Positions 2,429 to 56,482 of a stretch of DNA of 64,000 nucleotides are shown one piece after another. The stretch covers positions 186,001 to 250,000 of the IMG/VR virus record IMGVR_UViG_3300027621_000003. The stretch is one strand, 5' to 3'. Under the pieces are notes generated by a model, which worked only from the letters and a program-made list of their open reading frames with translations, did not search any database and was not told the DNA's origin. The translations under genes were made by a program, and so were the position numbers. Position 1 is the first letter of the stretch. Each line of letters starts with the position of its first letter.

Positions 2429-2717
2429 ATTCAATAAATACCTCTTTCCCTAAAAAATTTCCAGAAAATTTCATCGTTAGTATTGTACCCCCAAAACCAC
2501 CTGTCAGAATGTCATATAGGGGGGGATACGGGAGGGGGGACCCCCACCATGGGGGGTGTGCCGTACTACAGGGGGGGAGTATAGTGTGGATAACTTATGT
2601 CCCCCTCCCCATGTGTCATAGTGTCATGTGGATAAGTAATGTCCCCGACTGATAAGGAGGTGGATAACTCCCCCCCTAAAAAAAAGGTGGGGGTTTGGTA
2701 GTGTCAAATAGATTACC

Positions 2718-2725
2718 TATCTTTG
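2718..2725 (+). promoter_or_regulatory. Bacteroidota-type -7 promoter element TATCTTTG
   Basis: Matches TAnnTTTG. TGTCA lies 16 nt upstream, the same spacing as for the copy at 2847-2854. Confidence 0.6.
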
Positions 2726-22572: not shown

Positions 22573-25500
22573 TTACCTTAGTAATGTAAAAGTTCCGTTG
22601 TATTGAAATACTTTATCTTCAAGTGACGTTACTATCATTTTATATACATATACACCATCTGGTGCAGGTTGTCCTTTATAATTACCATCCCATCCTTTTG
22701 TAAGGTCGGTTGTTTCATACATTTTTTCACCCCAACGATTAAAGATTAACATTTCATATGTTTTGTTATTAATAACATACGGTCTGAATGTATTGTTTTC
22801 ATTTGGTCCAGCACCATCAGGTGTAAATGCGTCAGGTACAAAGATAATGATATCAGGACCAATAACAACCTTTTTCATTGAAGAATCTTTACATCCTTTA
22901 TCTGTGGTAACAATTAACTTAATCCAATATGTCCCTGTATCCTTTCCAAATACAATGTTTGAGTTCTTAAGTGTATCACTACCAATCTTATATGATTTAC
23001 CCCAAGTCCAATTGTGTTTCATGTTGGTGACAAATGGATTCTGACTAACACTTGATGTGTTAATAGTTTTGAACTTAGGTAATGCCACCGTTGTTTTGTA
23101 CAATGGGTCGGTATTAAACACAACACTTGGTTTTGGATAAACATTAACGGTTTGTGTTATTGTTCTATTACATTGTTTTTTACCTTCTACGTTTGTAATT
23201 GATAAAGTTATTTGGTATTGTCCTTGTGTTGAGAACAAGTAAGGAACTGAACTGTTATTAGTGGAGATACTATTAGTATTTACATACCAATTATATGTTA
23301 ACAAAGAAGGGTTAATTCCTTTTCTTTCGGTGGGTGTAAAAGTGGTATTCAGTGGTTCACATCCATTTTGATATGTAAACATTGGGTCGGGATATTGGTG
23401 AATATAAACTCTTACGGTATCAAAAGGGTTTGGACATACATTTTTTGCAACACTCCAATCAACTCTAACATCAACATAACCTAACGCAGTATCAGTAATT
23501 GTTGGGACATACTTTTTATTCATGGTTGGTCCAAATGTTGCCATTGGTGTCCAATTAAATGTTCCACCATTTAAGTATTGGGTATCAATTTTTAATGTAA
23601 CTGTGTCAAACTCACATACTTCAATTGGTTTAACAAATTTAACTTTTGGTATATTAACAATTGTGATTTTAGCGTATTCAGTATCTTGACAGTTATATGG
23701 TGTAAGACCAATCATCATCCATTTGTATGGACCTGGTACATAACCTGTTAGAGTTGTTGTTCCGTTGAAGAATCTACCATCAGGATAACTCACAATGGTT
23801 CCACCTTTATTACTTACAGCTAATGTTAACACATCCAAAGGAATTGCGGATGCACATATTGTAGTATCTCTAACTCTCAAGTCCGATGTATCATGAACTA
23901 TGATATTAAAACTATCTATTTTTACACAACCAAATTGTGAACTTACATATTTTATGTTATACACACCAGGTCCTGTAGATGTTTTGAATAATCCTGTAGA
24001 AATGTTTGTAGTTACTTTTGGATGACTCCTATCACCATTTACATCTTGAACGTAAATTGTTCCTCCTGTTGGTTTAACACCATTAACGGTTATGTAGTCA
24101 AACATATTAACATTAATACCTGAGTTCACACAATAATCAGGAATTGTTTTAATAATAACTGTTGGTTCTGCAATTATATTTACGTCAACAGTATCGGTAC
24201 TTTGACATCCTGTAACTAAATCTCTAACAATAAGTTTGAATGTGTATTTTCCTTGATATTCATCTTGAAACGATAAACCAAAGTTAAATTTGATGTTTGG
24301 TGTTACACCACCTGAAATGTCATACAATAATTTTGATGTATCAATTCCTGATGGAGCTCTTACCACATCCCATCTCATATAAACACCTGATTTGGTTGCT
24401 GGTTTAGTTCTTAACACGTCCATCATCATTGACCCAATATCCTGACAAATAGTTTTTGGAACTAATGTAATCATTGGTGTACCATAAATTGTTTGTGTTG
24501 TTGAATCCATGTTGGAACAACTATTTGTGTCTGTGAACTTCACATACATTTTGGTGGTATAATTGTTTCCACCTTGTAATTTACTATTGTCAAGTAAAGT
24601 TGTGTTGAACAAAAATCTTCCATTATAAGGAATATATCCGTAAGTTATATTACCTGATTTTTTTAACTTATCTCCATTCCAAACATCATACGTTCCAAGA
24701 TTATGAGGTTTAACTAAGAATAGTTCCGACCATATACTACCATAAGAATAACATTGAGGTTTTAGTGGTTTTGGACTCCAACTAATTTTTGGTAATGGTT
24801 TAACCCTCACAAACATTGTATCCATATCTTCACAAGAACGTCCATTTTGAGTTAGAACAGTCTTTAATGTAAACATATAGGTTAATTTTGTTATATCAGA
24901 TTTTAGCTTATAGGTTGATAAATTACCCAATCCGCCCCAAGTATATGTAGGACTTAATAGTGGTGGTCTATGACTGGCAGTCAAGGTGAATGTGTCTTTA
25001 TCGCATATTGCTTGGTTTAGTCCTGCATTTGTTATTACAGTATCGTTTACAAAAACTGTTGCGGTATCATATTTTACACACTTCCACTTTGTTTCCATTA
25101 CCTGTACCCAATAGATGCCTTTTAAATTGGTTTTAAATATTCGTGTTGTATCACCAGTGCTCCACATATATTTAACCGTGTCTGAATTTTGAGCATCAAA
25201 TGTAGCAATTTCATAAGTACATATTTGTTGGTCAATTCCAATTCCCACCACTGGTAATGGTTTCTTATAAATTGTAGTTGTATCATAGAAAATACATCCA
25301 TCCCCATCAGTAATTTTTAGACGAACTGTAGAGTCACGATTAATATTAGGAATACTTAAAGTTTGAAAAGTATCTCCTAAAATATGCTCTTCAGATTTCC
25401 AAGCCGCTTTAGACCCTGTATCTTTCACTACTCTGGTCCAATAGTATTTGAATGGTGAATTACCAAACAATATGTTAGCATTTAACTTCATTGTAGTACC

Positions 25501-27114
25501 AAAACACGCAAAAGTGTCAGCATCAGCCATAACAACCTGAGGTGGATTTGGAATAATAACAGTATCCCTATATATGGTAGGACAGTTATCTGAGTTGTTT
25601 ACAGTATGTACAATAATGTATTTTCCACCACGGTAAAATGTCATAGTATCTGATTTTTTTGTACTATAAAATATCTCAGACTTGCCCAAGCTATCTCTTA
25701 CACTCCACTTAAATTGAGGAGCACCTTTAAAGGATAAACTAACAGATGCCGCCATGGCGAATTTACCACATTTTAAATTTGTGTATTTGCGAATACTAAA
25801 TGCTCGTGGATTTACTTTAACCTTAAAACCACGAATGGCTTGAGAAGGTTTTGGACAGTGTTCATCTGTTACTGTTACCGTGAAAGCATAAGAAATATCT
25901 GACGCCATACCCACAGAAGGTGTCCATTCAAAATAAGCCCATGCTTTTCTTTTTTCGGGCCAATCCTTCCTATTTGCCAAGGTAAACTTAGCGCCAGGAA
26001 TACCTTTATTCCATTTTAAATTTGTTGTATCTGGAATTGTTTGATTCGGAGTAAATGTTTCATCATCCGATTCTACCTTGAATTTTAGTGTTTCACCTTC
26101 ACAGACTTTCCAATTAAACGGACCTAACAATGTTGGTGCTTTGTTGTAACCACAATCATCTTTCACCCACAATTGCATATCTCTACGTGTTTTACCAACA
26201 ATGATATAACTGCCTGTGGCACTGTCTTTTCGCCATTCTGTAATTACAATCACCGCAATTGCAACTTCATCACATTTCGTGGGTGTTAAGATAATATCAC
26301 CAGAACTTGTATCAAAGAATAATCCTCTTGGAGGGTTCAGTCCGGGTTTAGGAGCACAGTTAATTGAAGTTGGTGGAATGCAATATGGCGTCATGAAATA
26401 ACGAGGAGTAAATGGCGAAGAATAAGATACAGAATTGTTGGGCAAAGTGTTAATACCATTTGTTAAACTGTATGAAAAAGAATCATAATCAACAGTATCA
26501 ATTGCACCATTATTAAAATAATATGCCTGATTACAACAAAGAAAGGCGATGGGAGCATTACTTAGTGTTGGAGAAGAGTTACACTTGTTTGTAGTCTTCT
26601 TTATATTACAGATGTTAATCATACAGGTAGTATAAAAACCTTGACTGGCGGGTCCAGTAGTAATGGCACCATTTCTACAACACTGTCCAATGTAAAATGT
26701 CACTTCACAACATGTAGATTTATTGAGATAACCACTTAATGGACTTGTATTAAAATCTACCGTAACTTCATAGGTATGTTCTTCAATTCCCTCACCAGTA
26801 CCATAAGTATTTTGAGGAGAACAAGGCGAACTCGCTGTTGAACATCGTGGCGTAACGTCTTTAATTCCCGTTCTGGTAATAGATAAAAGACTACTTCCGC
26901 ATCCATTTCCACCATTGGTTCCTGCAAATACACCAAATTCAGGAGAATTGAATGGGACACCTCTACAATCTCTATAAATTTTTGCTGTGATTTTATATTT
27001 TCCGTTACCCAAACATTTATAAGACATATCTCCACCCATCATGTGAGTGGATGTGGAAATGTTTGATAACAAAAACGTTAGAATAAAAAGTAATAATGGT
27101 AAAAGTTTTTTCAT
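22573..27114 (-). CDS. Large T9SS type B CTD surface protein with Ig/PKD-like repeats
   Basis: Signal peptide MKKLLPLLLF; THMMGGDMSYKCLG N-terminus; C-terminal FVPDAFTP...IFNRWGE...WDGNY...GVYVY...GTFTLLR. Confidence 0.9.
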   Translation of the reverse strand: MKKLLPLLLFILTFLLSNISTSTHMMGGDMSYKCLGNGKYKITAKIYRDCRGVPFNSPEFGVFAGTNGGNGCGSSLLSITRTGIKDVTPRCSTASSPCSPQNTYGTGEGIEEHTYEVTVDFNTSPLSGYLNKSTCCEVTFYIGQCCRNGAITTGPASQGFYTTCMINICNIKKTTNKCNSSPTLSNAPIAFLCCNQAYYFNNGAIDTVDYDSFSYSLTNGINTLPNNSVSYSSPFTPRYFMTPYCIPPTSINCAPKPGLNPPRGLFFDTSSGDIILTPTKCDEVAIAVIVITEWRKDSATGSYIIVGKTRRDMQLWVKDDCGYNKAPTLLGPFNWKVCEGETLKFKVESDDETFTPNQTIPDTTNLKWNKGIPGAKFTLANRKDWPEKRKAWAYFEWTPSVGMASDISYAFTVTVTDEHCPKPSQAIRGFKVKVNPRAFSIRKYTNLKCGKFAMAASVSLSFKGAPQFKWSVRDSLGKSEIFYSTKKSDTMTFYRGGKYIIVHTVNNSDNCPTIYRDTVIIPNPPQVVMADADTFACFGTTMKLNANILFGNSPFKYYWTRVVKDTGSKAAWKSEEHILGDTFQTLSIPNINRDSTVRLKITDGDGCIFYDTTTIYKKPLPVVGIGIDQQICTYEIATFDAQNSDTVKYMWSTGDTTRIFKTNLKGIYWVQVMETKWKCVKYDTATVFVNDTVITNAGLNQAICDKDTFTLTASHRPPLLSPTYTWGGLGNLSTYKLKSDITKLTYMFTLKTVLTQNGRSCEDMDTMFVRVKPLPKISWSPKPLKPQCYSYGSIWSELFLVKPHNLGTYDVWNGDKLKKSGNITYGYIPYNGRFLFNTTLLDNSKLQGGNNYTTKMYVKFTDTNSCSNMDSTTQTIYGTPMITLVPKTICQDIGSMMMDVLRTKPATKSGVYMRWDVVRAPSGIDTSKLLYDISGGVTPNIKFNFGLSFQDEYQGKYTFKLIVRDLVTGCQSTDTVDVNIIAEPTVIIKTIPDYCVNSGINVNMFDYITVNGVKPTGGTIYVQDVNGDRSHPKVTTNISTGLFKTSTGPGVYNIKYVSSQFGCVKIDSFNIIVHDTSDLRVRDTTICASAIPLDVLTLAVSNKGGTIVSYPDGRFFNGTTTLTGYVPGPYKWMMIGLTPYNCQDTEYAKITIVNIPKVKFVKPIEVCEFDTVTLKIDTQYLNGGTFNWTPMATFGPTMNKKYVPTITDTALGYVDVRVDWSVAKNVCPNPFDTVRVYIHQYPDPMFTYQNGCEPLNTTFTPTERKGINPSLLTYNWYVNTNSISTNNSSVPYLFSTQGQYQITLSITNVEGKKQCNRTITQTVNVYPKPSVVFNTDPLYKTTVALPKFKTINTSSVSQNPFVTNMKHNWTWGKSYKIGSDTLKNSNIVFGKDTGTYWIKLIVTTDKGCKDSSMKKVVIGPDIIIFVPDAFTPDGAGPNENNTFRPYVINNKTYEMLIFNRWGEKMYETTDLTKGWDGNYKGQPAPDGVYVYKMIVTSLEDKVFQYNGTFTLLR

Positions 27115-27172
27115 CTCTATAAGTATAGACAATATTAATGATAAAAAGTATTCTTGCTGTAAAAAAATAAAA

Positions 27173-28476: not shown

Positions 28477-28513
28477 AATACAAAGATACAATTAGTTTTT
28501 GAATTACCAAACT

Positions 28514-29539
28514 TTATTTTTCAGATAACAAGAATTTATTTGATATTGCTTTGAAAGAAATTGTGTTATCCAAAGAACGAACCACAACACCTTCACGTTC
28601 TGCAAGTTTGTTTAAACGAGATTTGTCTTCAGCCAATTTTACCATCCCTTCAACCGTTTCAGGTAATAAGAATGCTACATCTAAAATTGGTACAGATAAT
28701 AATTCTAACTCATCCAATAAGATTAAGAAGTCATTAATGGTCATTCTTGTTTGTGTATCAATATCAAACCCATTGAAGAAATGAACTGTTTGTCCTTTGA
28801 TTTTGTATGGGTTACCTTGGATACCTTCACCAATCAACTCACCTTGTAAACAAATGTTTCCTTTGATTTTGAATTTGTTTTCCAAGTCAAGTTCACGGGC
28901 AACTTTCCAAAAAGTATTTCCTTCAGTTTCAAGTAATTCCAAATTACGAGAACATACACCAAACTCACCCTCATTCATATAAAATGTTGCAGATGAACCA
29001 TCCAACTTTTCAGTCATGTAAAACTGATGCTCAGATGTTAGTTTATATTCTTCATACTCCTTAACCAAGTTCTGAACCCTTTCTTCATCTGTCTTACGTA
29101 AGAAAGATGGGAACCCACCTTTTACTTTACCAGATAGTTCGGCAGGAATTGGTGGTTCGTATTTCACAATACCCAACATTTCAGTTACATCCAAACCTTC
29201 AGGTAAATCGTGTCCTGTTGCAAATTGTGTGATTGGAACAACACTGATTGGAAGAATAAGTCCTTGAGATAATTGACCACGAAGTCTAATTGTCTTCAAT
29301 CTGAAACCTTCTTGGTCACCCATTTTCTTGTAAGATGATTTACGTAAAAACTCAAACTCTTCCTTGATAGGTAAGAATGAATCAATCTCACAATACACCA
29401 CACTGTTTCCCACTTTATGTTCAACATCTTTGGCCACAACAACATTCCAACCACCTACAATGGCTATTTCAATTTTGTCTGCACCTTCAATAGGTCGGAT
29501 GTCAGTAATTTTTCTAATAGTTGCTAATTTTCTTTCCAT
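28514..29539 (-). CDS. RNA ligase, DRB0094/Rnl2-like family
   Basis: RKLATIRKI..I.PIEGADKIE N-terminal domain; KTDEERVQN; EKLDGSS; GELIG; EGVV; FKAIS. Confidence 0.9.
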   Translation of the reverse strand: MERKLATIRKITDIRPIEGADKIEIAIVGGWNVVVAKDVEHKVGNSVVYCEIDSFLPIKEEFEFLRKSSYKKMGDQEGFRLKTIRLRGQLSQGLILPISVVPITQFATGHDLPEGLDVTEMLGIVKYEPPIPAELSGKVKGGFPSFLRKTDEERVQNLVKEYEEYKLTSEHQFYMTEKLDGSSATFYMNEGEFGVCSRNLELLETEGNTFWKVARELDLENKFKIKGNICLQGELIGEGIQGNPYKIKGQTVHFFNGFDIDTQTRMTINDFLILLDELELLSVPILDVAFLLPETVEGMVKLAEDKSRLNKLAEREGVVVRSLDNTISFKAISNKFLLSEK

Positions 29540-29543
29540 ATTT

Positions 29544-29726
29544 TTAATCTTTTCCAAAAGTATAACCAATCATAAATCCGTGTATCCAATATGTCTTTTC
29601 ATTGTCATCACCTTGATTATCCATCTCATCCCAAGTTTGTTCCGCCAATTTTTGAACTTTGAACTTTGTGTCCTTTCTTTCTTCTACGGCTTCGGGACTC
29701 AAATCAACTAACGGTTTATTTTTCAT
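29544..29726 (-). CDS. Small hypothetical protein
   Basis: Start corrected (TATCTTTG at 29731-29738). Confidence 0.55.
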   Translation of the reverse strand: MKNKPLVDLSPEAVEERKDTKFKVQKLAEQTWDEMDNQGDDNEKTYWIHGFMIGYTFGKD

Positions 29727-33622: not shown

Positions 33623-34663
33623 TCATAATTTTTTAAATTCAGGTTTTAATATATTCCATATCAATTTATCATAAGGTTTTCCATCCCACATTGCAAACAT
33701 GACCGCTCTATAAGGTGGATGTCCGTTTTCCATAACATGTTGAGCAAACTCTTTCTTGGTTGGTTCAACTTCTCTATCACTATACTTTCCATATCGGAAG
33801 TTATAGTGAGCCTTTCCACAATATTCATCTACTTGAAGGTATCCATAACTCAAATTACCAGCATATCCTTTTACTTTAGCATAGAACTCATCAGGTACAT
33901 CCTTCAAGAACTCATTGATGTCACCACCATTAGCCAAGAACTCCCATACACCAGTGGTAGATACATTTGTCATTATCTTATGAAGACGCAAATATTCCTC
34001 ACCTTTGATTTTCATTCGGTCTCCGTTAGAGAAACGAACAACGAACCCTTCAGTGTTCTGTTCAACTTTACCCTTTAATTCGGAATAATCCCTAATTCCA
34101 TCGTATTTTTTAACAATATCAAACCCTTCATACAATTCATTGTGTGGGAGTTCTTCACCAGTCTCAGTGTTGATTACACCAAGTAAAACCAAACGCTCCT
34201 CACCATTGTAGTCAACCACGATTCTGTTCTCAGGATAGATTATTTCAAACAAATAAGTGAACCTATCTACTATGATGTCTTGGTAGTTGTGCTTTATAGC
34301 AAAGTCGGTCATCCACTTTGATTGGTCAGAAGTAAATGAACCACGAGTGGCACATATCATCTCACCATTGTACTTGAACATGATTCCCAATGAACCATCC
34401 ATCTTATCAAATACCTCAAACTCAGATGTTGCTACGTGTTTGTTCTCCTCTAAGTTGAAGAACTTTTTGAATGGTCGGGCAACAACATTACCTCTGTTGT
34501 CTGTAACCAATCCACGACATGTCAATGTAACATCATCCCATAACTCACCGAACTGAACGTTAGGTGTATAGTTCCATATGGATAATGGCAAACTACGGTG
34601 TGTCTGTTTGAACAACAAACCCCTCTTTGTGTAGTCGTCTAATGTAACCATTGGAAATTTCAT
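33623..34663 (-). CDS. T4 Rnl1-like RNA ligase
   Basis: CRGLV..VVARPFKKFFN; KMDGSL; ATRGSF; FEIIYPENRIVV; EGFVV; KIKGEEY. Confidence 0.9.
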   Translation of the reverse strand: MKFPMVTLDDYTKRGLLFKQTHRSLPLSIWNYTPNVQFGELWDDVTLTCRGLVTDNRGNVVARPFKKFFNLEENKHVATSEFEVFDKMDGSLGIMFKYNGEMICATRGSFTSDQSKWMTDFAIKHNYQDIIVDRFTYLFEIIYPENRIVVDYNGEERLVLLGVINTETGEELPHNELYEGFDIVKKYDGIRDYSELKGKVEQNTEGFVVRFSNGDRMKIKGEEYLRLHKIMTNVSTTGVWEFLANGGDINEFLKDVPDEFYAKVKGYAGNLSYGYLQVDEYCGKAHYNFRYGKYSDREVEPTKKEFAQHVMENGHPPYRAVMFAMWDGKPYDKLIWNILKPEFKKL

Positions 34664-34705
34664 AGTACAAAGATACAATTAATTTTTGATTATTTCATTT
34701 TTATT

Positions 34706-35274: not shown

Positions 35275-36072
35275 TTAAAATATTTTAATTTGACTATTTT
35301 TTTTATCGTAATCTTCAAGTCTTTTTATTGACATATCAATATACTCCTGATGTAATTCAATACCCAAACAATCTCTATTTAATTTTTTTGCCGATAACAA
35401 TGTAGTACCAGAACCTAAAAAAGGGTCCAATATCATATCACCAACAAAAGAATAATATTTAACAATTTTATCTGAAAGTTCTTCAGGATATGGTGCTAAA
35501 TGTTTTGAATGAGTTTCAGGGTTTATATACCAAACATTACTTCTTTCATATTCTTCAGTTACTAACGATTCTTTTAAAGTATCACCTGAGTATGAACGAA
35601 CTATTTTATCAATTAAAAAATTTGCCGGCTTTTGAAAGACAAATATTGTTTCTGACACTAAATTTGGTTTATAAGCAACAGGTTTTCTGTGTTGGAAAAA
35701 ACCACCATTTCTATTTATTGCCGAACCTTCTGGTTTAACCCACACGATATCTTCAAGATATTTCCAACCAATTTTTTCCATTATTGAAAAAAAATGAAAC
35801 GGTATTGGTAGTCTTTTACTTTCTGAGTTTCTATTGGCTCTTTGTACTATTACTGGTGATAAATTTACCACACACATACGACCATCTTTAGTTACTCTAA
35901 AAACTTCTAAGAAGACTTTTTCTAAAAAAATTAAATATTCATCGTATGTTGGCCATTGAGAATATGATTTTGCATTATAATATGGTGGTGATGTCCATGT
36001 TAAATGGATTGATGAATCTAATATTTCTTTTAACTTTAATTCACAATCACCTAAAATTATTTCATATTTCAT
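35275..36072 (-). CDS. DNA N4/N6 methyltransferase (beta class)
   Basis: TSPPY ... HLAPYP ... LDPFLGSGTT. Confidence 0.92.
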   Translation of the reverse strand: MKYEIILGDCELKLKEILDSSIHLTWTSPPYYNAKSYSQWPTYDEYLIFLEKVFLEVFRVTKDGRMCVVNLSPVIVQRANRNSESKRLPIPFHFFSIMEKIGWKYLEDIVWVKPEGSAINRNGGFFQHRKPVAYKPNLVSETIFVFQKPANFLIDKIVRSYSGDTLKESLVTEEYERSNVWYINPETHSKHLAPYPEELSDKIVKYYSFVGDMILDPFLGSGTTLLSAKKLNRDCLGIELHQEYIDMSIKRLEDYDKKNSQIKIF

Positions 36073-36497
36073 TAATTAAATTTTCTACCTGTTGGTTTAG
36101 TATTTGAACAGTCACCTTTTTCAATACTTTTACGATTATGACAAAGTTTACAATATGTTCTTACATTGTAAATATCATTATTGTTATGATTACCATCTAT
36201 ATGGTCTAAATCCAAACATCCTATTTCAAATCCAAACCAACTTTCTTTATTAGGTACTGGACATTTAAAACCTAAATGACCATCAATGTTCTCACAATAT
36301 TTTTTCTTATGAATTGTAATTCCTTCTCGGATTATACCTTTTTTTCTATCATTTTGACATTTAGAACATTCCGTTTTAAATGACCAATTAGACCAACTTC
36401 TTACAGCAACTTTATTTTCACAACCAACATTAATACATTTTGGTAATGTATTACCCATTTCATAAAATTTACGTTTTTGAATCTCAGAAATTTTCAT
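36072..36497 (-). CDS. HNH endonuclease
   Basis: LDLDHIDGNHNNN...N...CKLCH; zinc-binding Cys pairs. Confidence 0.8.
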   Translation of the reverse strand: MKISEIQKRKFYEMGNTLPKCINVGCENKVAVRSWSNWSFKTECSKCQNDRKKGIIREGITIHKKKYCENIDGHLGFKCPVPNKESWFGFEIGCLDLDHIDGNHNNNDIYNVRTYCKLCHNRKSIEKGDCSNTKPTGRKFN

Positions 36498-36570
36498 ACA
36501 TCAAAGATACAAATAAAAAGTAACATAAAAAAGAACCCCCCAACTTTTTATTGTTAGGGGAGTTACTTAA

Positions 36571-37308
36571 TTAGTTTTCCACATAAAATTCAAAACCTTG
36601 TAAACCAAAGTATTTAATGTGATTATTTATTCTTCTTACTTTTTCAACATTACTAGTGTTTGTCCAAACAACATAATTTCCAACCCAAACACTACAATTG
36701 TTCATTTTATTCTCTTCATAATCAAATCCAAGTTCTTCAATTGAAGTTGATATGTGTGGTTCACGAGTATCCAAATTATCCCATCCAACAATTTCAGCAA
36801 TCTTTGTCATACCCAAAACAAAAGTTTCTTTAGCATTTTCTTGAGTCATGTCTTCACCATTTAATTTAAAAACTACTCTTGACGGACTGTTACGTTTAAT
36901 AACACTAGTCATCTCACCTTTATCATTTTGTGAAATTGTTTTGTCCTCAGCGATTTTTTGAATCATATCAATTTCAACGGCCCCCATTAACTTGGTCAAT
37001 TTGCTAACACGACTATTTAATATTTCAATATCTGAAACATCAAACCATTCTGTAGTAATATTACGTCTATAATCGTACTGTTTTTCTACTCTATAATCTT
37101 CAAAACAAGTATGTAAAATACTTTCCAATTGTGACATTTCTTCAGTTTCAAAAACACGAACAAATGTTACATCAAAAGGTAAATGGGTAGAATTTAATTG
37201 GGTCTCTCTCAATTTATATTGAATTGATTTACCAATTTTGTGATACCCGTTTACAAACTTACCACCATGGTCAATAATTCGTGCGATGTATACATATCCT
37301 TTATCCAT
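36571..37308 (-). CDS. GIY-YIG-superfamily (T5orf172/Mug113-like) nuclease
   Basis: GYVYI..KIGKS..R..QL..LE..LH...EWF; start corrected (TATCTTTG at 37313-37320). Confidence 0.8.
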   Translation of the reverse strand: MDKGYVYIARIIDHGGKFVNGYHKIGKSIQYKLRETQLNSTHLPFDVTFVRVFETEEMSQLESILHTCFEDYRVEKQYDYRRNITTEWFDVSDIEILNSRVSKLTKLMGAVEIDMIQKIAEDKTISQNDKGEMTSVIKRNSPSRVVFKLNGEDMTQENAKETFVLGMTKIAEIVGWDNLDTREPHISTSIEELGFDYEENKMNNCSVWVGNYVVWTNTSNVEKVRRINNHIKYFGLQGFEFYVEN

Positions 37309-37348
37309 ATAACAAAGATATGGAATAGTTTTAAAACCACCAAATATA

Positions 37349-37384
37349 AAAAAAAGAAACCCCAAATAATTTCTTATTCGGGGT
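37349..37384 (-). terminator. Terminator of the large ncRNA
   Basis: Minus strand ACCCCGAATAA-GAAA-TTATTTGGGGT followed by TTCTTTTTTT. Confidence 0.75.
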
Positions 37385-38247
37385 CGGACATAGGATACTA
37401 TCCTATGTGGGGTTTTGGCTAAAACGATGAGATTACTCGTTTAGTTGACCTGTCTTTTGTAGAGATTATACCCGACTAAGGTTTCCTCTCGTATCCACTA
37501 ATGTTGCCATCAGTATCAAGTCATCACCGATTGTTTACGACAATCACACGTTTCGGTCAAACTTACTCAACTATTACTTGCCTCTATAGAATCTTGCGAA
37601 CTCTCTAAACCCGTGCCCAGGTACTAGGACTTTCTTAGTCAAAACTGAAGGACTTGGGGTCCTGTCAATTTCCTTGTTGGTATTTCTACCCAAGGAATTA
37701 GGTGACTTTCAGTTTAACCGCTCAGAGACTTTTCCTTTTCTGTAGTTTATTTTTTCATAATAAATCAACATAGTGAGTGTGATGAAAGATGAGCTCTGAG
37801 GTGGATAGCTTCTCTTTTGAAGAAGTAAATACCACTCACCTTTCTGTAATCCGCCAAGACTACGACTTATCTTGATATCGTTGTGTCACCACTTGGATAC
37901 CTGTGATAAATTGGTGACCTAGCCCTACATCCACTTGGCGGCGGAGTCGAACCATTCCCTTTACCTTTTCCTATTGATGTCTCCATCTCAACCCTGACAC
38001 CTCACGTGGTCAAAATAAATAACTTCTCTCAGCTGTTGCCCATAAGAAATCATTCGTAGGTAATTTGTTTAGTTGTGAGCCACTTTCGTGACACCGAGAT
38101 ATTTGTACCGTTGAGTACTTTCTCCCCTATAGTCCCGTTACCGGGGTTATCTTAATCGACGCTAAACCGCCGAATACAAACCAAACTTCAATTTAAGGGG
38201 GTGAAGTTGGCGTTTCAAAGAACGTTTTGAGATGTTATTCTCAATTG
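37350..38247 (-). ncRNA. Large structured non-coding RNA (~880 nt), GOLLD-like candidate
   Basis: ORF-free and GC-richer than its flanks. TAACTTTG promoter at 38253-38260, boxA-like GTTCTTTGAAA at 38213-38223, many GNRA-capped hairpins, long-range helices and a terminator. Confidence 0.75.
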
Positions 38248-38252
38248 TTTCA

Positions 38253-38284
38253 CAAAGTTAAGACTATTTTTTCAAACTGTCAAA
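38253..38284 (-). promoter_or_regulatory. Bacteroidota sigma promoter for the ncRNA
   Basis: Minus strand TTTG-N20-TAACTTTG. Confidence 0.7.
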
Positions 38285-38375
38285 TAAACTTTGTTTTTTT
38301 TATTTGGTAAGTAATAAATATATCCTTATTTACCAAAGTTATAAAAACATAACATCTTTTTTTTCAGTTGTCAAA

Positions 38376-38783
38376 TCATTTTAGAACATTTTTTAAATAT
38401 TCTTTCAAATTCTCACCGAGTGGTTCAGGTAACTCATCAATTGAAAAGTATCCACACTCTGAATGTTCTTCCCCGTACTCAGCATTTTCCAAGTCAGGGT
38501 GAATAGGCTTGTCAACCTCATTTAAGAATACATACATTACTGAAGATTGTTTTGTTCCTTTACGGTTCATTCTACTCATCACCCCAAGGAATTCTAAGTC
38601 ACCCGTTAATTCTTTACCAGTCTCTTCATAGAACTCACGATGTGCCGTGTCAATGATTTCTTCATCTGGTTCTACTTTACCACCAGGAATACTCCATTCC
38701 CCTGAGTAAGTTTCAACATTACTCCTTTTACACAAAAGACATTTGTTTCCTGATTTAACGATTACTCCGGCTGATTTCTTCAT
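38376..38783 (-). CDS. NUDIX hydrolase
   Basis: GGKVEPDEEIIDTAHREFYEETG Nudix box. Confidence 0.92.
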   Translation of the reverse strand: MKKSAGVIVKSGNKCLLCKRSNVETYSGEWSIPGGKVEPDEEIIDTAHREFYEETGKELTGDLEFLGVMSRMNRKGTKQSSVMYVFLNEVDKPIHPDLENAEYGEEHSECGYFSIDELPEPLGENLKEYLKNVLK

Positions 38784-39518: not shown

Positions 39519-40079
39519 ATGAAAAATGTAGATTTTAAAACCGCGATATTCCTTTGGTTCTTTGTAATCTTTGGAGCTCTTGGAGTGGCAATCTACAGTA
39601 TTGAAAAAATACAGGAACAAGCTGAAGAAGAATATTTGGAGTTGTTGGGTTCTGAACCTACATCTCCAAATTGTCTTAGGATGTATAACTCAATTGAGAA
39701 ATACTCTAAGATGTATCGTGTACCTAAGTACATTGCTTACAATGTGGCTTATAAGGAAACACATTATCAAGGACCTTTTCATTGGTCTTATGACCCATAC
39801 CAAACATCATATGCAAACGCTGTGGGTCCAATGCAAATCATTACCAAATATGCTCACCCTTATGCTGGTAGACATGTTAGTCAAAAAGAACTTACTAGAA
39901 ACATTGAATTGAATGTTATGGTTAGTATGAAGATGTTAAGAGCCCGATATAACACTTACCATAGTTGGGCACTCTCTTGTGGTGGTTATAACACTGGTAG
40001 TCCAATAGTTAATGAGTACGCAAGTTATTGTGCATCAAACAAGAACTATAAAAAGAATTGGGTTACTTACTCTCGTTAA
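39519..40079 (+). CDS. Membrane-anchored lytic transglycosylase (SLT family)
   Basis: N-terminal TM; AYKET, AVGPMQI, N..S.KML and GYNTG. Confidence 0.8.
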   Translation: MKNVDFKTAIFLWFFVIFGALGVAIYSIEKIQEQAEEEYLELLGSEPTSPNCLRMYNSIEKYSKMYRVPKYIAYNVAYKETHYQGPFHWSYDPYQTSYANAVGPMQIITKYAHPYAGRHVSQKELTRNIELNVMVSMKMLRARYNTYHSWALSCGGYNTGSPIVNEYASYCASNKNYKKNWVTYSR

Positions 40080-41466
40080 TCTTTTCCTGAAGTTTGTTTA
40101 CAAATTCGGTTTGTAATTTCTTCAATACATTAATGTATGCCGCTCCACTTCTTTCAGGGTCGTATTTGTATTGTCCACTTGGTGGTCTATTACTCCTACC
40201 AAGATAGTTAATACCTGAAATATTTGTGATACATTTATGTCCTCCTGAATTGGCTTGGATTAAATCCCACGCACTTACACCAAACTTATCAAGGACTTCA
40301 AATTCCTTGTCAGTTAAGTTGTTTGTAGGTTTATCCATCAACCTATCAATAATCTGAAGATACTCATCGCCATTCTCCATTCTACTAAATTTTTCACCAT
40401 AAAGAGCTTTAAAATCTTTAAATGTAAATCCAACAGACTCTGGTCCTATGGAAACCTCAGAAATATATTTGATAGTTGATAATGGAATCATTCTACCTTT
40501 AAGTTGGTCTTCGTGTTTTGCTAACACTTCTTGAGCGATATCTCCCAAGTTAACCCCTTTAAGTTCACGTTCCTTTTTAAATGGATTACACGATGCTTGT
40601 AGTAATCCAAGTGGCCAAGCTATTACCAAGAAATCCGCTTCAGGGTTGTTCTTAAATGGCGTGTATCTATCGTATGAACCCGGATTGAACATACTACCTC
40701 CTCCATATTGTACAATGATGTTATCAACCACCTTAACGTTTGGTGATGTCTCCATCTGTTTAACATACTCTGATTTATTCTTTTCTAATGTTTGTGTACC
40801 TGGTAATTTTCTTTCATCCATTTCTTTCTTAACTTGCATTAAGATTGAATATAAAGATGGTTCAGAATTCATTACCAAATTCTCCATAAAGCCTGGCTTA
40901 TTCTTAAATGCCAAGATTAGTTTGTTTAAAACCAATCCCATAGCAAATTTGTTTTGTAAAAAACTTTTGTCCTTATCAAGTTTAAACATATAGTTCATTA
41001 CTTGTTCAGGTGTAATATCATATTTTGCATAATCCGCAGAGTCAACAGTTGAAATTAATCTCAAATCTGTTTCAGGGAATATGTCTTTTGGTGATACTAT
41101 TTGTGATATTGTTTCCACGTTTGAACGTGATGACCTAAATGATGTCGCTCCTGTTTCATCAGCACCTGCTTGTTTATCGTGGTGGTCAGTATGGATAATA
41201 AACATTGGTTTACCGTGTGCAAAGTCAACAAGAACTGGCATTGTATCACCATTAGCATCAAGTTTTTTAACCGAGAATTCTTTATCACCATATTGAATTA
41301 TTTCAGTATCAACTACATTGATACCGTTATCCTCCAAATATTTCTTCATAGCAATTGCTGTTGTAACACCATCTAAATCTTGGTGAAAGTATATTTTTGC
41401 TTTTGGATATCTTTTAGCCAAAGCTTTAATATCACGTAATCCCGATTCTTTAATTAACCTTTTCAT
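40063..41466 (-). CDS. DHH-family phosphoesterase-like protein
   Basis: HQDLDG, VDFA, TDHH and SGGH motifs. Confidence 0.75.
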   Translation of the reverse strand: MKRLIKESGLRDIKALAKRYPKAKIYFHQDLDGVTTAIAMKKYLEDNGINVVDTEIIQYGDKEFSVKKLDANGDTMPVLVDFAHGKPMFIIHTDHHDKQAGADETGATSFRSSRSNVETISQIVSPKDIFPETDLRLISTVDSADYAKYDITPEQVMNYMFKLDKDKSFLQNKFAMGLVLNKLILAFKNKPGFMENLVMNSEPSLYSILMQVKKEMDERKLPGTQTLEKNKSEYVKQMETSPNVKVVDNIIVQYGGGSMFNPGSYDRYTPFKNNPEADFLVIAWPLGLLQASCNPFKKERELKGVNLGDIAQEVLAKHEDQLKGRMIPLSTIKYISEVSIGPESVGFTFKDFKALYGEKFSRMENGDEYLQIIDRLMDKPTNNLTDKEFEVLDKFGVSAWDLIQANSGGHKCITNISGINYLGRSNRPPSGQYKYDPERSGAAYINVLKKLQTEFVNKLQEKINESK

Positions 41467-52123: not shown

Positions 52124-52174
52124 TTCTTATATGTTTTATATTGTTAGATTGTTATACAAAGATACTGATAATTT

Positions 52175-53854
52175 TTAGAAATCCAAATCAAACATCAGAA
52201 TATTTTGTAAATATTCTTCATTGGTTATTTCTGAATTGTCATTTGTGTCTGTAATACCATCCTGTAGTATTCTATATTCACTCATAGAATTTTTAACCAC
52301 ATTATATTTGATGGTTTCTGTTTGTGTTGTTTTTGTCATTTTGAAATCTTCAAACTTAAAATGTTTGACAGCCAACATAACTTGATTATCAAGTTCTTCA
52401 AGTGCGAAGTTCCATTTGGAATCCAAATTTTTATTAAACCTTCCAAGACTTTGTTTTCTTTCAAATTTTGAATTAGAGTAATTCCATCGGTATTCAATAG
52501 TTGCTCTTTCTTTTGATTCAGAACTACCTTCCCTTAACGATATAATAAAACAGTGTATGTTTTTATGATAAGTTTTAACACAATTTGATTGATATTCTGA
52601 TTCGTCAAAATATTCGTATTGTTTTGTAAACAAAATTGGATAATATACACCACCTTGAGGTGTGGCTATTTCTTTACCTATACCATCGAAGAATCGTTGT
52701 GAGTATATTCTATTCCATTCACCATCTTTATGAAGAGATATTTTATTTGAAAATTCTATGTGTTCAACTGTAAACTCATTATTAGTTTTACTTTTCCATA
52801 CAACATCTTCATTATATCGTAATTTCAATGTAAGATAAAATTTAATGTGGTCCATAAAGGTATAGACACTACCACCATTCATAATAGAATTAACAAGACA
52901 TGTATAAAGATTAATTCTTTCTTTATTAGTAATGTGTTTGTTTAAAAGTCTGGTATAATTTCTTACATCAAAATAATCTTTGTACTGAAACAATTCTAAA
53001 ATTTCATTATCAGGTCGTGATTTAAGATATTTTGGTGGAACAATATTTTGAACAAAATTAATAACATTTGAATTAATAGTATTCACCAAATGTAAAACAC
53101 GATGGAATTTTTTACCACTTAAATCATATTTTTTTTCCGCAGCCTCAATCAAGTTAAAATGTGATTTTCTTAACTGTTTCATTGTCATACTTTCCCCATT
53201 GTTAAAAAATGCCAAATAATTGTTGGGTACTACAACATTGTGTAATGTAAGATAGTTTGTTATAAGTAAGTTGTTGGGACTAAATTTTCCATCTTTAGTT
53301 ATGTCAATGTCATGACCAAAAACTTTATTAAAAAAAGTACTGGAATAATTTATAAATAACCTTTCACCATCATCAGGGAAATGTGTCTTACATAGGGCAG
53401 ATAATCTACTAAAAAAATCAGTAATCATACCATTCCAAGCGTTAGACCTGACATATGATTGATTACCCTTGTTGTATTTTGTACCAACATATACAATTTT
53501 AGTTTTTTTATTAAAAGTTAAGAACTCAACTCTTTTATTGGTAACAAAATAATGTTTCCCTTCATTTCTATACTTCACATAGTAATACGCCTTTAAACTT
53601 ACTTTATCTTCACTATCTTCTAATACTAATGTAACTCTATTAAGATGAATATGCCATAACTTATTTCCATAGTTCTCTAAATAAGTTTCTTTTTCAATTG
53701 TATTTACACGACCATCAGGTCTAAAAAAATAACGTTTTTTCTTACCATCACGATTCATACTCTGAGCCAATTCAAAATCTCTTTGTATATCACAATGGTC
53801 ATGGAATTTTCTACCATGAAATTCTTCAAACACATTTTTTAATAGTGGTTCCAT
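52175..53854 (-). CDS. PcfJ-like domain protein
   Basis: EYFDESEYQSNCVKTY...IISLR...RATIEY...QSLGRFN. Confidence 0.7.
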   Translation of the reverse strand: MEPLLKNVFEEFHGRKFHDHCDIQRDFELAQSMNRDGKKKRYFFRPDGRVNTIEKETYLENYGNKLWHIHLNRVTLVLEDSEDKVSLKAYYYVKYRNEGKHYFVTNKRVEFLTFNKKTKIVYVGTKYNKGNQSYVRSNAWNGMITDFFSRLSALCKTHFPDDGERLFINYSSTFFNKVFGHDIDITKDGKFSPNNLLITNYLTLHNVVVPNNYLAFFNNGESMTMKQLRKSHFNLIEAAEKKYDLSGKKFHRVLHLVNTINSNVINFVQNIVPPKYLKSRPDNEILELFQYKDYFDVRNYTRLLNKHITNKERINLYTCLVNSIMNGGSVYTFMDHIKFYLTLKLRYNEDVVWKSKTNNEFTVEHIEFSNKISLHKDGEWNRIYSQRFFDGIGKEIATPQGGVYYPILFTKQYEYFDESEYQSNCVKTYHKNIHCFIISLREGSSESKERATIEYRWNYSNSKFERKQSLGRFNKNLDSKWNFALEELDNQVMLAVKHFKFEDFKMTKTTQTETIKYNVVKNSMSEYRILQDGITDTNDNSEITNEEYLQNILMFDLDF

Positions 53855-56409: not shown

Positions 56410-56482
56410 ACAACAAATATAAGAAAGTTTTACCTAAAAAGCAAATGTTTACAAGAAATATTTATTGTAATATATTAGAACT

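What the first reader, a model, noticed from the sequence alone, without database searches (positions are those of the whole stretch)
37350..38284. Giant structured ncRNA (~880 nt) expressed like an rRNA operon
Seen on the minus strand: promoter TTTG-N20-TAACTTTG; boxA-like GTTCTTTGAAA (38213-38223); hairpins CCCG-GUAA-CGGG (38134-38145), GUCAC-GAAA-GUGGC (38079-38092), GAUG-GAGA-CAUC (37976-37987), GGUA-GAAA-UACC (37679-37690), GAUUGU-CGUAA-ACAAUC (37529-37545) and CUGAUG-GCAA-CAUUAG (37498-37513); long-range pairs CCGCCAAG/CUUGGCGG, GUCACCA/UGGUGAC, CUCAGAG/CUCUGAG and AAACUGAA/UUCAGUUU; a T-loop-like GGUUCGACUCC; and a strong terminator. No ORF of 60 aa or more. Known: GOLLD (~800 nt) and ROOL (~600 nt) are large phage-associated RNAs of unresolved function, and boxA recruits Nus antitermination for untranslated RNA. 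Inference: a GOLLD member or a new large RNA class, here without adjacent tRNAs but flanked by nucleases and a NUDIX gene.
Basis: partly seen in the sequence, partly recalled or inferred. Interest (0 to 1): 0.85.

Follow-up and report, generated by a model that had tools for sequence, protein, structure and literature searches.

The report
Phage GOLLD RNA with rRNA-type leader
The ~900-nt non-coding RNA is a clear member of the known GOLLD family of giant phage RNAs, not a new RNA class, but in this jumbo phage it has its own promoter and a leader box identical to the commonest anti-termination box (boxA) in Bacteroidota-type ribosomal RNA operon leaders.

Summary
Rfam GOLLD (RF02032) matches window 37424-37844(-) end to end at 309.6 bits (threshold 150). 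The upstream ~400 nt, which Rfam does not model, is a conserved GOLLD 5' domain. It aligns with 31 distinct viral-contig homologs, 41-42 of its ~80 predicted pairs show compensatory changes, and a model of its core also hits env-38-like GOLLDs.

The other two, and the 'T-loop', are not supported.

The window is 100% identical to a 295-kb IMG/VR jumbo-phage contig. Promoter type, absence of Shine-Dalgarno motifs and the leader box all point to a Bacteroidota host.

The added value is the leader. All 32 sequences have a -33/-7 Bacteroidota promoter followed by GTTCTT(TGAAA). The exact 11-mer GTTCTTTGAAA is the commonest boxA-type motif in 107 Bacteroidota-type 16S leaders fetched from metagenomes (33 exact on the sense strand, 0 antisense, 0 in shuffles). 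'Expressed like an rRNA operon' is therefore supported by sequence, though Nus-factor binding is untested.

No tRNAs are nearby. The biological role of GOLLD remains unknown.

The parts
38253..38284 (-). Dedicated promoter of Bacteroidota sigma-A type: -33 TTTG(ACA) at 38281-38284, 20-nt spacer, -7 box TAACTTTG at 38253-38260. Inferred transcription start is about 38248.
   Evidence: The sequence is confirmed. The same -33/-7 layout occurs in all 32 sequences, with variable 'nn' and spacer bases. TAnnTTTG spans -12 to -5 in flavobacteria (PMC9723704). The start site is inferred, not measured.
38227..38244 (-). Small leader hairpin UUGAGA-AUAACA-UCUCAA immediately 5' of the box, in the position of a boxB-like element.
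   Evidence: The sequence is. A different hairpin occupies the same place in many homologs, for example GAUGA-GAAA-UCAUC and CAGUA-AGAG-UACUG. It is absent in about ten homologs, where the box starts at about +2. Many Bacteroidota-type rrn leaders have a hairpin before the box.
38213..38223 (-). boxA-like element GUUCUUUGAAA.
   Evidence: It is the only exact copy in the 64-kb window. GTTCTT is invariant in all 32 sequences and the full 11-mer is exact in 24 of them. It is identical to the commonest boxA-type motif in 107 Bacteroidota-type 16S leaders: 33 exact on the sense strand, 0 antisense, 0 in shuffles. Compare the B. subtilis consensus AUGAUCUUUGAAA and the E. coli consensus UGCUCUUUAACA (PMC13753749).
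38181..38210 (-). Leader hairpin with a C-rich loop (CCCCC at 38197-38201).
   Evidence: The fold is. The CC in the loop is invariant (C84 and C85). RNAalifold pairs CCC with a distant GGG (alignment columns 133-135 with 453-455), but that pairing is weakly supported and broken in the window clade.
37845..38172 (-). GOLLD 5' domain, starting at the invariant hairpin CGGCGGUUUAGCGUCG (38157-38172). It contains the covarying hairpins CCCG-GUAA-CGGG, GUCAC-GAAA-GUGGC and GAUG-GAGA-CAUC (a conserved GNRA loop), and a three-way-junction core at 37956-38068.
   Evidence: nhmmer finds homologs at E 1e-26 to 1e-137 in about 45 viral loci. RNAalifold finds 41 of 79 pairs compensated. My own count is 98.8% canonical with 42 double changes, against 5-16 when partners are slid and a shuffle maximum of 34. 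Core model R1 hits env-38-like L017/L035 and L026.
37936..37940 (-). Loop arm CGCCA of a covarying loop-loop (kissing) interaction.
   Evidence: It pairs with 37852-37856 (UGGCG). The pairing is 97.1% canonical and 4 of 5 pairs have double changes (CUGCCA/UGGCAG, CUGCAA/UUGCAG, CUGUCA/UGACAG). These data cannot tell whether the contact is within one RNA or between copies.
37852..37856 (-). Partner loop arm UGGCG, in the last hairpin of the 5' domain (stem 37846-37863).
   Evidence: The stem of this hairpin also covaries (alignment columns 506-512 with 517-523).
37424..37844 (-). GOLLD 3' domain, the part modelled by Rfam RF02032.
   Evidence: 309.6 bits against a gathering score of 150, E 1e-87, model positions 1-416 of 416. 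The hit is reproduced.
37721..37800 (-). Pseudoknot-like helix CUCAGAG (37794-37800) with CUCUGAG (37721-37727), enclosing the A/U-rich variable linker.
   Evidence: It is 100% canonical in 31 unique rows and 4 of 7 pairs are doubly compensated (CCCGAAG/CUUCGGG, CCUGAAG/CUUCAGG, CUCGAAG/CUUCGAG). Slid controls give 0. The Rfam consensus structure does not draw it.
37350..37408 (-). 3' tail: hairpin at 37388-37408, then an intrinsic terminator (12-bp stem at 37358-37385 plus U8 at 37350-37357).
   Evidence: A strong stem plus U-run terminator sits at the same place in most homologs.
38376..38783 (-). NUDIX hydrolase gene immediately upstream on the same strand. It is listed as conserved context, not as a proven functional partner.
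   Evidence: Pfam NUDIX at E 1e-22. A NUDIX gene at 41-51% identity lies upstream of GOLLD in about 25 homologous loci, together with a DHH-like gene and a methyltransferase gene.

Best explanation
This is a GOLLD RNA gene of a ~295-kb jumbo phage that most likely infects a member of the Bacteroidota.

Shown:
- A ~897-nt ORF-free transcript unit runs from about 38248 to about 37352 on the minus strand.
- Its 3' half matches the Rfam GOLLD model end to end.
- Its 5' half is a conserved, covarying variant of the GOLLD 5' domain.
- It has its own conserved promoter, a leader box identical to the commonest boxA-type motif of Bacteroidota-type rrn leaders, and an intrinsic terminator.

Inferred:
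- Host sigma-A RNA polymerase starts at the TTTG-N20-TAACTTTG promoter.
- The nascent GUUCUUUGAAA box recruits NusB/NusE (S10) and the other Nus factors, as on rRNA operons. The long untranslated RNA is then made quickly, resists Rho-dependent termination and is helped to fold during transcription.
- By homology with the solved env-38 and Streptococcus agalactiae GOLLDs, the 5' 'cap' and 3' 'ring' domains assemble, through kissing loops and A-minor contacts, into a multimeric RNA cage. The A/U-rich linker would sit inside that cage.

What the cage does for the phage is unknown. My sub-confidences are: GOLLD identity 0.97, independent transcription unit 0.85, Nus-dependent boxA function 0.55-0.6, cage formation 0.6.
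For: - Rfam GOLLD scores 309.6 bits at E 1e-87 over the full model.
- The 5' half is homologous in about 45 viral loci.
- Compensatory changes occur at 41 of 79 pairs by RNAalifold and 42 of 83 by my count, against slid controls of 5-16.
- The core model hits env-38-like GOLLDs just upstream of their 3' domains.
- The fold z-score is -4.7.
- No ORF of 40 aa or more lies inside.
- The promoter and box are conserved in all 32 sequences at variable spacing of 5-66 nt.
- The same hairpin-plus-box leader occurs in L017, which has a different, env-38-like 5' domain.
- The box equals the rrn-leader consensus: of 107 Bacteroidota-type 16S leaders, 75 have the loose motif and 33 the exact 11-mer, against 8 and 0 on the antisense strand and about 6 and 0 in shuffles.
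- Published boxA consensus sequences and NusB binding to the B. subtilis box are in PMC13753749.
- Six promoters of this type lie directly upstream of genes in the window, and Shine-Dalgarno motifs are not enriched.
- The window is 100% identical to IMG/VR UViG_3300027621_000003, a 294,914-bp contig.
- Cage formation by GOLLD RNAs is reported in PMC12286853 and PMC12990946.
Against: - There is no expression, 5'-end or Nus-binding data for this RNA.
- GOLLDs of Caulobacter, Brevundimonas, Vibrio and Mycobacterium phages have no boxA-like motif within 1 kb upstream, so the leader is not a family-wide feature.
- The cryo-EM construct of env-38 begins downstream of the position of the box, by my reading of its sequence. 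The box is therefore not needed for assembly in vitro.
- Five homologs have a diverged second half (GTTCTTACACT).
- The 16S signature used to fetch rrn leaders is typical of Bacteroidota but was not classified taxonomically. Only 58 of 107 also carry CAAGTCGAGG.
- The host assignment is indirect.
- Oligomer state cannot be predicted from sequence, and GOLLDs are known to vary between 10, 12 and 14 copies.
Confidence: 0.8

Rival explanations
1. The RNA is GOLLD, but the conserved GUUCUUUGAAA box is not a Nus-recruiting boxA. It could instead be a promoter-proximal DNA element, an RNase processing site, or a structural or tertiary element of the RNA. On this view its identity with rrn leaders reflects a shared non-Nus function or shared promoter context.
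For: In about ten homologs the box starts only 5 nt after the -7 box, at about +2, which is compatible with an initial-transcribed-region element. GOLLDs from other host phyla lack any such box. No binding data exist. The MFE fold pairs the box with the conserved AAAAGAC of the 3' domain.
Against: The distance from the -7 box varies from 5 to 66 nt in GOLLD loci, and from about 46 to 114 nt (first base to first base) in the rrn leaders listed. That argues for an RNA-level element and against a fixed DNA promoter element. The motif closely matches experimentally supported boxA sequences of B. subtilis and E. coli. The variants GTTCTTACACT show no compensating change in the 3' AAAGAC. By my reading of its sequence, env-38 assembles without this region.
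Confidence: 0.3
2. It is a new large RNA class unrelated to, or only superficially resembling, GOLLD.
For: The 5' 400 nt are not covered by the Rfam model. They give no blastn hit in GenBank phages and no nhmmer hit to the 5' regions of L014, L017, L026 and L035.
Against: The 3' half matches GOLLD over all 416 model positions at twice the gathering score. GOLLD is defined as having a variable 5' domain. The structural core of the 5' domain is found by a covariance model in env-38-like GOLLDs at the expected position.
Confidence: 0.01
3. The RNA has no independent transcription unit. It would be the long structured 3' UTR or a processed tail of the upstream NUDIX mRNA, which would explain the conserved NUDIX-GOLLD adjacency.
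For: NUDIX is on the same strand and directly upstream in about 25 loci. No canonical terminator lies between the NUDIX stop codon (38376) and the GOLLD promoter.
Against: A full -33/-7 promoter is conserved in front of every homolog, while the surrounding intergenic sequence is not. The flanking genes, from methyltransferase and DHH-like upstream to thymidylate synthase downstream, recur across most homologous loci, so the adjacency is explained by common descent of related phages.
Confidence: 0.1

Closest known systems
GOLLD RNA (Rfam RF02032; Weinberg et al. 2009; cryo-EM structures of env-38 and S. agalactiae GOLLD, PMC12286853 and PMC12990946)
   Same: The 3' domain matches end to end. 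The two-domain architecture has a variable internal linker. The size is about 900 nt. The gene is phage-encoded. The 5' domain core (GUUGAG, GNRA hairpin, CAAUAGGAA junction) is shared with env-38-like GOLLDs. Loop-loop contacts covary.
   Different: There is no tRNA within 64 kb, and none in any locus of this subfamily, whereas GOLLD is usually described as lying near tRNA arrays. The 5' domain is a distinct sequence variant. The gene has its own Bacteroidota-type promoter and an rrn-type boxA leader, which I could not find reported for GOLLD.
rRNA operon leader antitermination signals (boxB-boxA; NusB/NusE/NusA/NusG/SuhB complex)
   Same: The order is the same: promoter, small hairpin, then a single-stranded box. 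The box sequence is identical to the commonest one in Bacteroidota-type 16S leaders. In both cases the downstream product is a long, untranslated, highly structured RNA.
   Different: The element sits in a phage gene for a non-ribosomal RNA. No boxC or leader-trailer helix was identified. Nus-factor binding is untested. GOLLD is about 0.9 kb, against about 5 kb for an rrn operon.
ROOL RNA (Rfam RF03087), the other phage-associated cage-forming giant RNA
   Same: It is a large, ornate, phage- or prophage-associated non-coding RNA that forms homo-oligomeric cages.
   Different: No ROOL match was found, even at E up to 1. Its sequence and secondary structure are unrelated.
Phage lambda nut sites (boxA plus boxB with N protein)
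   Same: A phage transcript carries a host-type boxA next to a hairpin, to make RNA polymerase resistant to termination.
   Different: In lambda the order is boxA then boxB, and a phage N protein binds boxB. Here the order is hairpin then box, as in rrn operons. The hairpin is not conserved in sequence and is absent in some homologs. No N-like protein is implicated.

Membership tests
GOLLD RNA (RF02032) | Score at or above the curated gathering threshold of the Rfam covariance model for the conserved 3' domain | tested here: met
   309.6 bits against 150, E 1e-87, model positions 1-416 of 416, window 37424-37844(-).
GOLLD RNA (RF02032) | Helices of the 3' domain are maintained by compensatory changes among relatives | tested here: met
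   The multistem-closing Rfam helix CGGUUAAACU/AGUUUGACCG is 97.7% canonical with 5 doubly changed pairs. The linker-closing helix is 100% canonical with 4 of 7 doubly changed. Only these two 3'-domain helices were counted.
GOLLD RNA (RF02032) | A large structured 5' domain upstream of the 3' domain, variable between subtypes | tested here: met
   About 330-400 nt, with 41-42 compensated pairs. Core model R1 hits L026 (E about 1e-8) and env-38-like L017/L035 (E about 2e-5) just upstream of their 3' domains. It gives no hit in the Caulobacter, Brevundimonas, Vibrio or Mycobacterium phage GOLLDs or in L014.
GOLLD RNA (RF02032) | Phage or prophage context | tested here: met
   The window is identical to a 294,914-bp IMG/VR viral contig. 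Neighbours are phage-type genes. The nearest GenBank relatives are 634-642 kb uncultured phages.
GOLLD RNA (RF02032) | Location next to or within tRNA arrays (frequent, not obligatory) | tested here: not met
   There are 0 tRNAs in the 64-kb window and 0 in 17 subfamily loci. Three of four cultured-phage GOLLDs are in tRNA arrays.
GOLLD RNA (RF02032) | Self-assembly into a 10- to 14-mer RNA cage | not testable with these tools
   Known for env-38 and S. agalactiae GOLLD. Here there are only conserved loops and a covarying loop-loop pair.
GOLLD RNA (RF02032) | Expression that rises during lytic growth | not testable with these tools
rrn-type boxA antitermination leader | Sequence matching the host-phylum rrn-leader boxA consensus | tested here: met
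   GTTCTTTGAAA is the top 11-mer in 107 Bacteroidota-type 16S leaders: 33 exact, with 0 antisense and 0 in shuffles. It is close to the B. subtilis and E. coli consensus sequences.
rrn-type boxA antitermination leader | Position in the 5' leader, downstream of the promoter and often after a small hairpin | tested here: met
   The box lies 5-66 nt after the -7 box in all 32 sequences, and a hairpin is present in many of them. rrn leaders show the same layout.
rrn-type boxA antitermination leader | Binding of NusB-NusE, and Nus-dependent read-through of Rho or intrinsic terminators | not testable with these tools
   This needs biochemistry or a reporter assay.
Bacteroidota sigma-A promoter | -33 TTTG and -7 TAnnTTTG separated by about 19-21 nt | tested here: met
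   TTTG-N20-TAACTTTG at 38253-38284. It is conserved in all 32 sequences. Five further instances in the window all lie directly upstream of genes. The consensus is from PMC9723704.
ROOL RNA / group I and II introns / RNase P / tmRNA / tRNA | A match to the Rfam model | tested here: not met
   None appears at the gathering threshold over the whole window, nor at E up to 1 over 37300-38400. ARAGORN finds nothing.

The most novel reading that the evidence does not exclude
GOLLD RNAs of Bacteroidota phages, both this subfamily and the env-38-like subtype used for cryo-EM, are transcribed as 'honorary rRNAs'. On this reading, a host rrn-type boxA leader loads the Nus antitermination and RNA-chaperone complex onto RNA polymerase. 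That would ensure fast, Rho-resistant synthesis and co-transcriptional folding and assembly of the RNA cage. If so, GOLLD would be a phage-encoded, non-ribosomal, non-coding RNA that uses the rRNA antitermination machinery, and cage assembly in vivo might depend on that machinery.
Probability: 0.5. Interest if true: 0.55.

Novelty: new member of a known kind. Interest (0 to 1): 0.33.

Why it matters
GOLLD is among the largest bacterial or phage non-coding RNAs, and its function is still unknown even though its cage structure has been solved. This locus adds no new class, but it gives three usable facts.

1. A coherent GOLLD subfamily, with 31 distinct homologs fetched here, lives in large aquatic phages with Bacteroidota-type expression signals. 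None of its members sits near a tRNA. This weakens the idea that GOLLD function is tied to tRNA arrays.
2. These GOLLDs have a dedicated promoter and a leader box identical to the host-phylum rrn boxA. That suggests how a 0.9-kb untranslated RNA escapes Rho, and it may matter for folding in vivo. The cryo-EM construct omits this leader.
3. The covarying loop-loop pair and the linker-closing pseudoknot give testable contacts for this 5' domain variant.

Tried and rejected
- **blastn against GenBank phages.** The 935-nt region found nothing. GOLLD homologs are too diverged for DNA similarity search, so I used a motif scan of IMG/VR instead.
- **Genome-collection scan.** I used the invariant 16-mer CGGCGGTTTAGCGTCG. 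It returned 120 loci, almost all GC-rich genomes. The 5'-domain profile found no full-length match among them, only one marginal 66-position hit in L097 at E 4.5e-4.
- **Literature searches.** Searches for GOLLD with boxA, for the exact motif, for a phylum-wide boxA comparison, and for GOLLD in Bacteroidota or jumbo phages gave nothing relevant. The 2009 GOLLD paper is not held.
- **Rejected reader claims.** GUCACCA/UGGUGAC and AAACUGAA/UUCAGUUU are not conserved. The T-loop reading conflicts with covarying pairs.
- **Leader-trailer helix.** The MFE pairs the box with the 3'-domain AAAAGAC. I judged this coincidental, because AAAAG is conserved in the Rfam consensus and box variants are not compensated.
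- **NUDIX as a functional partner.** I considered it, but the flanking genes on both sides recur across the homologous loci. The adjacency alone is therefore not evidence.
- **A register error of my own.** My first coordinates for the Rfam helix were off by 2. The +2 slid control revealed the correct register.
- **A tool I avoided.** I did not use the count of structure pairs, to avoid sending a 524-character dot-bracket string. I ran equivalent counts with slide and shuffle controls in Python.
Full report
**1. What is there**

The region contains no ORF of 40 aa or more. It ends in a 12-bp stem plus U8 terminator. It is richer in G+C (41%) than the window (32%). The 897-nt stretch 38248-37352 folds at -256.7 kcal/mol, z = -4.7 against dinucleotide shuffles.

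**2. Identity**

An Rfam 15 scan of the whole window at gathering thresholds gives one hit. GOLLD (RF02032) matches 37424-37844(-) at 309.6 bits (threshold 150), E 1e-87, covering model positions 1-416 of 416. A permissive scan (E up to 1) of 37300-38400 adds only two sub-threshold noise hits. It finds no tRNA, tmRNA, RNase P, intron or ROOL. ARAGORN finds no tRNA in the 64 kb.

The Rfam model covers only the conserved 3' domain. The literature describes GOLLD as a universally conserved 3' domain plus a less conserved 5' domain, separated in three dimensions into a 'ring' and a 'cap' (PMC12286853; PMC12990946).

**3. The 5' half**

A motif scan of IMG/VR with the GOLLD 3'-end signature returned 54 loci. 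nhmmer shows that about 45 of them are homologous to both halves of the window RNA, with 5'-half E-values from 1e-26 to 1e-137. That gave 31 distinct full-length homologs.

The 32-sequence alignment of the 5' half (A1) has long invariant blocks. RNAalifold predicts 79 pairs, 41 of them with compensatory double changes. My own count on unique rows gives 83 pairs, 98.8% canonical, with 42 double changes. Slid partners give 5-16 and the maximum over 500 column shuffles is 34.

A covariance model of the core (window 37956-38068; A2 and R1) hits other GOLLD subtypes just upstream of their Rfam 3' domains. These are L026 (E about 1e-8) and the env-38-like L017/L035 (E about 2e-5). They keep the GUUGAG, GNRA hairpin, CAAUAGGAA junction (Rfam confirmation of those loci). 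The 5' half is therefore a sequence variant of the canonical GOLLD 5' domain, not a new class.

**4.

- **Hairpins.** CCCG-GUAA-CGGG, GUCAC-GAAA-GUGGC and GAUG-GAGA-CAUC covary. The three 3'-half hairpins are Rfam consensus helices.
- **CCGCCAAG/CUUGGCGG.** Its core is a loop-loop pairing between two hairpins (window 37936-37940 with 37852-37856). It is 97.1% canonical and four of five pairs are doubly compensated. Cryo-EM GOLLD 5' domains contain both intramolecular and intermolecular kissing loops. Which kind this one is cannot be told from sequence.
- **CUCAGAG/CUCUGAG.** It is 100% canonical in 31 rows with four compensated pairs. It closes the variable linker and is a pseudoknot relative to the first hairpin's internal loop, so the Rfam structure line does not show it.
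- **GUCACCA/UGGUGAC.** Not conserved: 42% canonical, and broken in the nearest relatives.
- **AAACUGAA/UUCAGUUU.** No better than shuffles, and it competes with an Rfam helix that is 97.7% canonical.
- **The 'T-loop' GGUUCGACUCC.** The stretch GGUUCGA is invariant, but its bases belong to two helices supported by covariation: alignment columns 400/435 and 411/423.

**5. Genome and host**

The window is 100% identical over 11.3 kb to L053, which is IMG/VR UViG_3300027621_000003, a 294,914-bp contig. It also matches a 232,874-bp contig. Neighbouring genes are phage-like: NUDIX, a T5orf172/MUG113 endonuclease, an HNH endonuclease, two N6/N4 DNA methyltransferases, Rnl1-like and Rnl2-like RNA ligases, and a DHH-like protein. 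The nearest GenBank phages, at 39-43% protein identity, are 634-642 kb uncultured phages.

Three independent sequence signals point to a Bacteroidota host:
- **Promoters.** The GOLLD promoter TTTG-N20-TAACTTTG fits the phylum's -33/-7 sigma-A consensus (PMC9723704). All six instances of this pattern in the window lie directly upstream of genes on the correct strand.
- **No Shine-Dalgarno.** Shine-Dalgarno cores are not enriched upstream of genes: 3 of 49 against a 9% background. This matches what is known for the phylum (abstract of PMC6847099).
- **The leader box**, described next.

**6. The leader**

All 32 sequences have the same layout: a -33 TTTGAC, 19-20 nt, a -7 TAnnTTTG, then 5-66 nt, then GTTCTT(TGAAA). 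The spacer between the -7 box and the box contains a non-conserved hairpin in many of them. In about ten homologs the box starts at about +2.

L017 has a different, env-38-like 5' domain, yet it has the same -7 box, hairpin and AUGUUCUUUGAAAUG. By my comparison with the published construct sequence, this lies about 55 nt upstream of where the env-38 cryo-EM construct begins.

| 107 leaders with at least 300 nt upstream | Loose motif [GT]NTCTTT[AG]A | Exact GTTCTTTGAAA |
|---|---|---|
| Sense strand | 75 | 33 |
| Antisense strand | 8 | 0 |
| Shuffled sequences (mean) | 6.2 | 0 |

GTTCTTTGAAA is the commonest 11-mer. The motif lies a median of about 176 nt before the 16S start. In the leaders listed it starts 46-114 nt after the start of a TAnnTTTG box, often after a hairpin.

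The published B. subtilis rrn consensus is AUGAUCUUUGAAA. It sits directly after a small 5' hairpin and binds NusB. The E. coli consensus is UGCUCUUUAACA (PMC13753749). The GOLLD leader box is thus identical to the commonest boxA-type motif in rRNA operon leaders of the presumed host phylum. It is the only exact copy in the 64-kb window.

GOLLDs of Caulobacter, Brevundimonas, Vibrio and Mycobacterium phages have no such box within 1 kb, and three of the four sit in tRNA arrays. I found no paper that connects GOLLD with boxA.

**7. Context**

No locus of this subfamily has a tRNA nearby. The order methyltransferase, DHH-like, NUDIX, GOLLD, small ORFs, thymidylate synthase recurs across most homologous loci. 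The NUDIX adjacency is therefore best read as common descent of related phages. The T5orf172 and HNH genes directly downstream are found only in the window's phage, which looks like an insertion of homing endonucleases.

**8. Mechanism**

What is shown is the transcript unit, its GOLLD identity, its conserved structure and its conserved expression signals.

What is inferred is the following chain. Host sigma-A polymerase initiates at about 38248. The nascent box loads NusB/S10 and the other Nus factors, as on rrn operons. This gives fast, Rho-resistant synthesis and assisted folding of a long untranslated RNA. The RNA then assembles into a multimeric cage like the solved GOLLDs, with the A/U-rich linker inside. 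The role of the cage for the phage remains unknown.

**9. Verdict**

This is a real, strongly supported RNA gene, but it belongs to a known family, which removes the 'new class' reading. The residual novelty lies in three things: a tRNA-free subfamily of large phages that most likely infect Bacteroidota, its 5'-domain variant, and the rrn-type boxA leader, which appears to be unreported and is easy to test.

Noticed in passing
window 36072-37344 (-): T5orf172/MUG113 (36571-37305) and HNH (36072-36497) endonuclease genes lie directly downstream of GOLLD, with their own TATCTTTG promoter at 37313-37344. They are present only in the window's phage (L053, L051). Relatives have small ORFs and thymidylate synthase there. 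This looks like an insertion of homing endonucleases next to the RNA gene.
   Followed up: partly
window 28514-29569 (-) and 33623-34678 (-): The window encodes two RNA ligases: one Rnl2-like (phrog_968, E 2.5e-84) and one T4 Rnl1-like (phrog_562, E 3e-73). In L007 the Rnl1 gene lies about 1 kb downstream of GOLLD. This could be an RNA-repair theme near GOLLD, in place of the usual tRNA array.
   Followed up: no
L017:8219-8316 (+): An env-38-like GOLLD locus has a tRNA-like stretch between its promoter and its boxA-like box. By eye it has acceptor-like ends GGUCGGU/ACCGACU and a GUUCGAUUCC T-arm-like segment. Neither ARAGORN nor Rfam (E up to 1) calls it a tRNA.
   Followed up: partly
window 2694-2725(+), 28481-28511(-), 37313-37344(-), 52157-52187(-), 56414-56445(-): Five further TTTG-N19-21-TAnnTTTG promoter matches all lie directly upstream of genes on the matching strand. 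Shine-Dalgarno cores are not enriched (3 of 49 genes). Both point to a Bacteroidota host.
   Followed up: yes
window 37912-37918 (-), alignment A1 columns 437-443: At alignment columns 438-443, the four sequences of the window's clade read GUCACC or GUCUCC, while the other 28 of 32 aligned sequences have the palindrome GGUACC. A six-base palindrome in an exposed position could make a symmetric contact between RNA copies. The window-only complementarity GUCACCA/UGGUGAC may replace it. This remains unexplained.
   Followed up: partly
window 40063-41466 (-): A 467-aa protein has only a weak DHH N-terminal match (E 2e-4) yet is the best conserved gene of the neighbourhood. It is 60-65% identical across about 30 loci and 39-43% identical to proteins of 634-642 kb uncultured phages. 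Its function is unknown.
   Followed up: partly
window 38290-38374 (-): Between the NUDIX stop codon and the GOLLD promoter there is a second TAACTTTG box without a proper -33 element. It is followed by an imperfect hairpin GGUAAAUAAGG...UUAUUACUUACC and an A-run. It is not a canonical terminator on either strand.
   Followed up: no
window 22573-27132 (-): A 1519-aa ORF, and several other ORFs of 450-630 aa, have no PHROG family at E up to 1e-5. The phage is poorly represented among known phage protein families.
   Followed up: no
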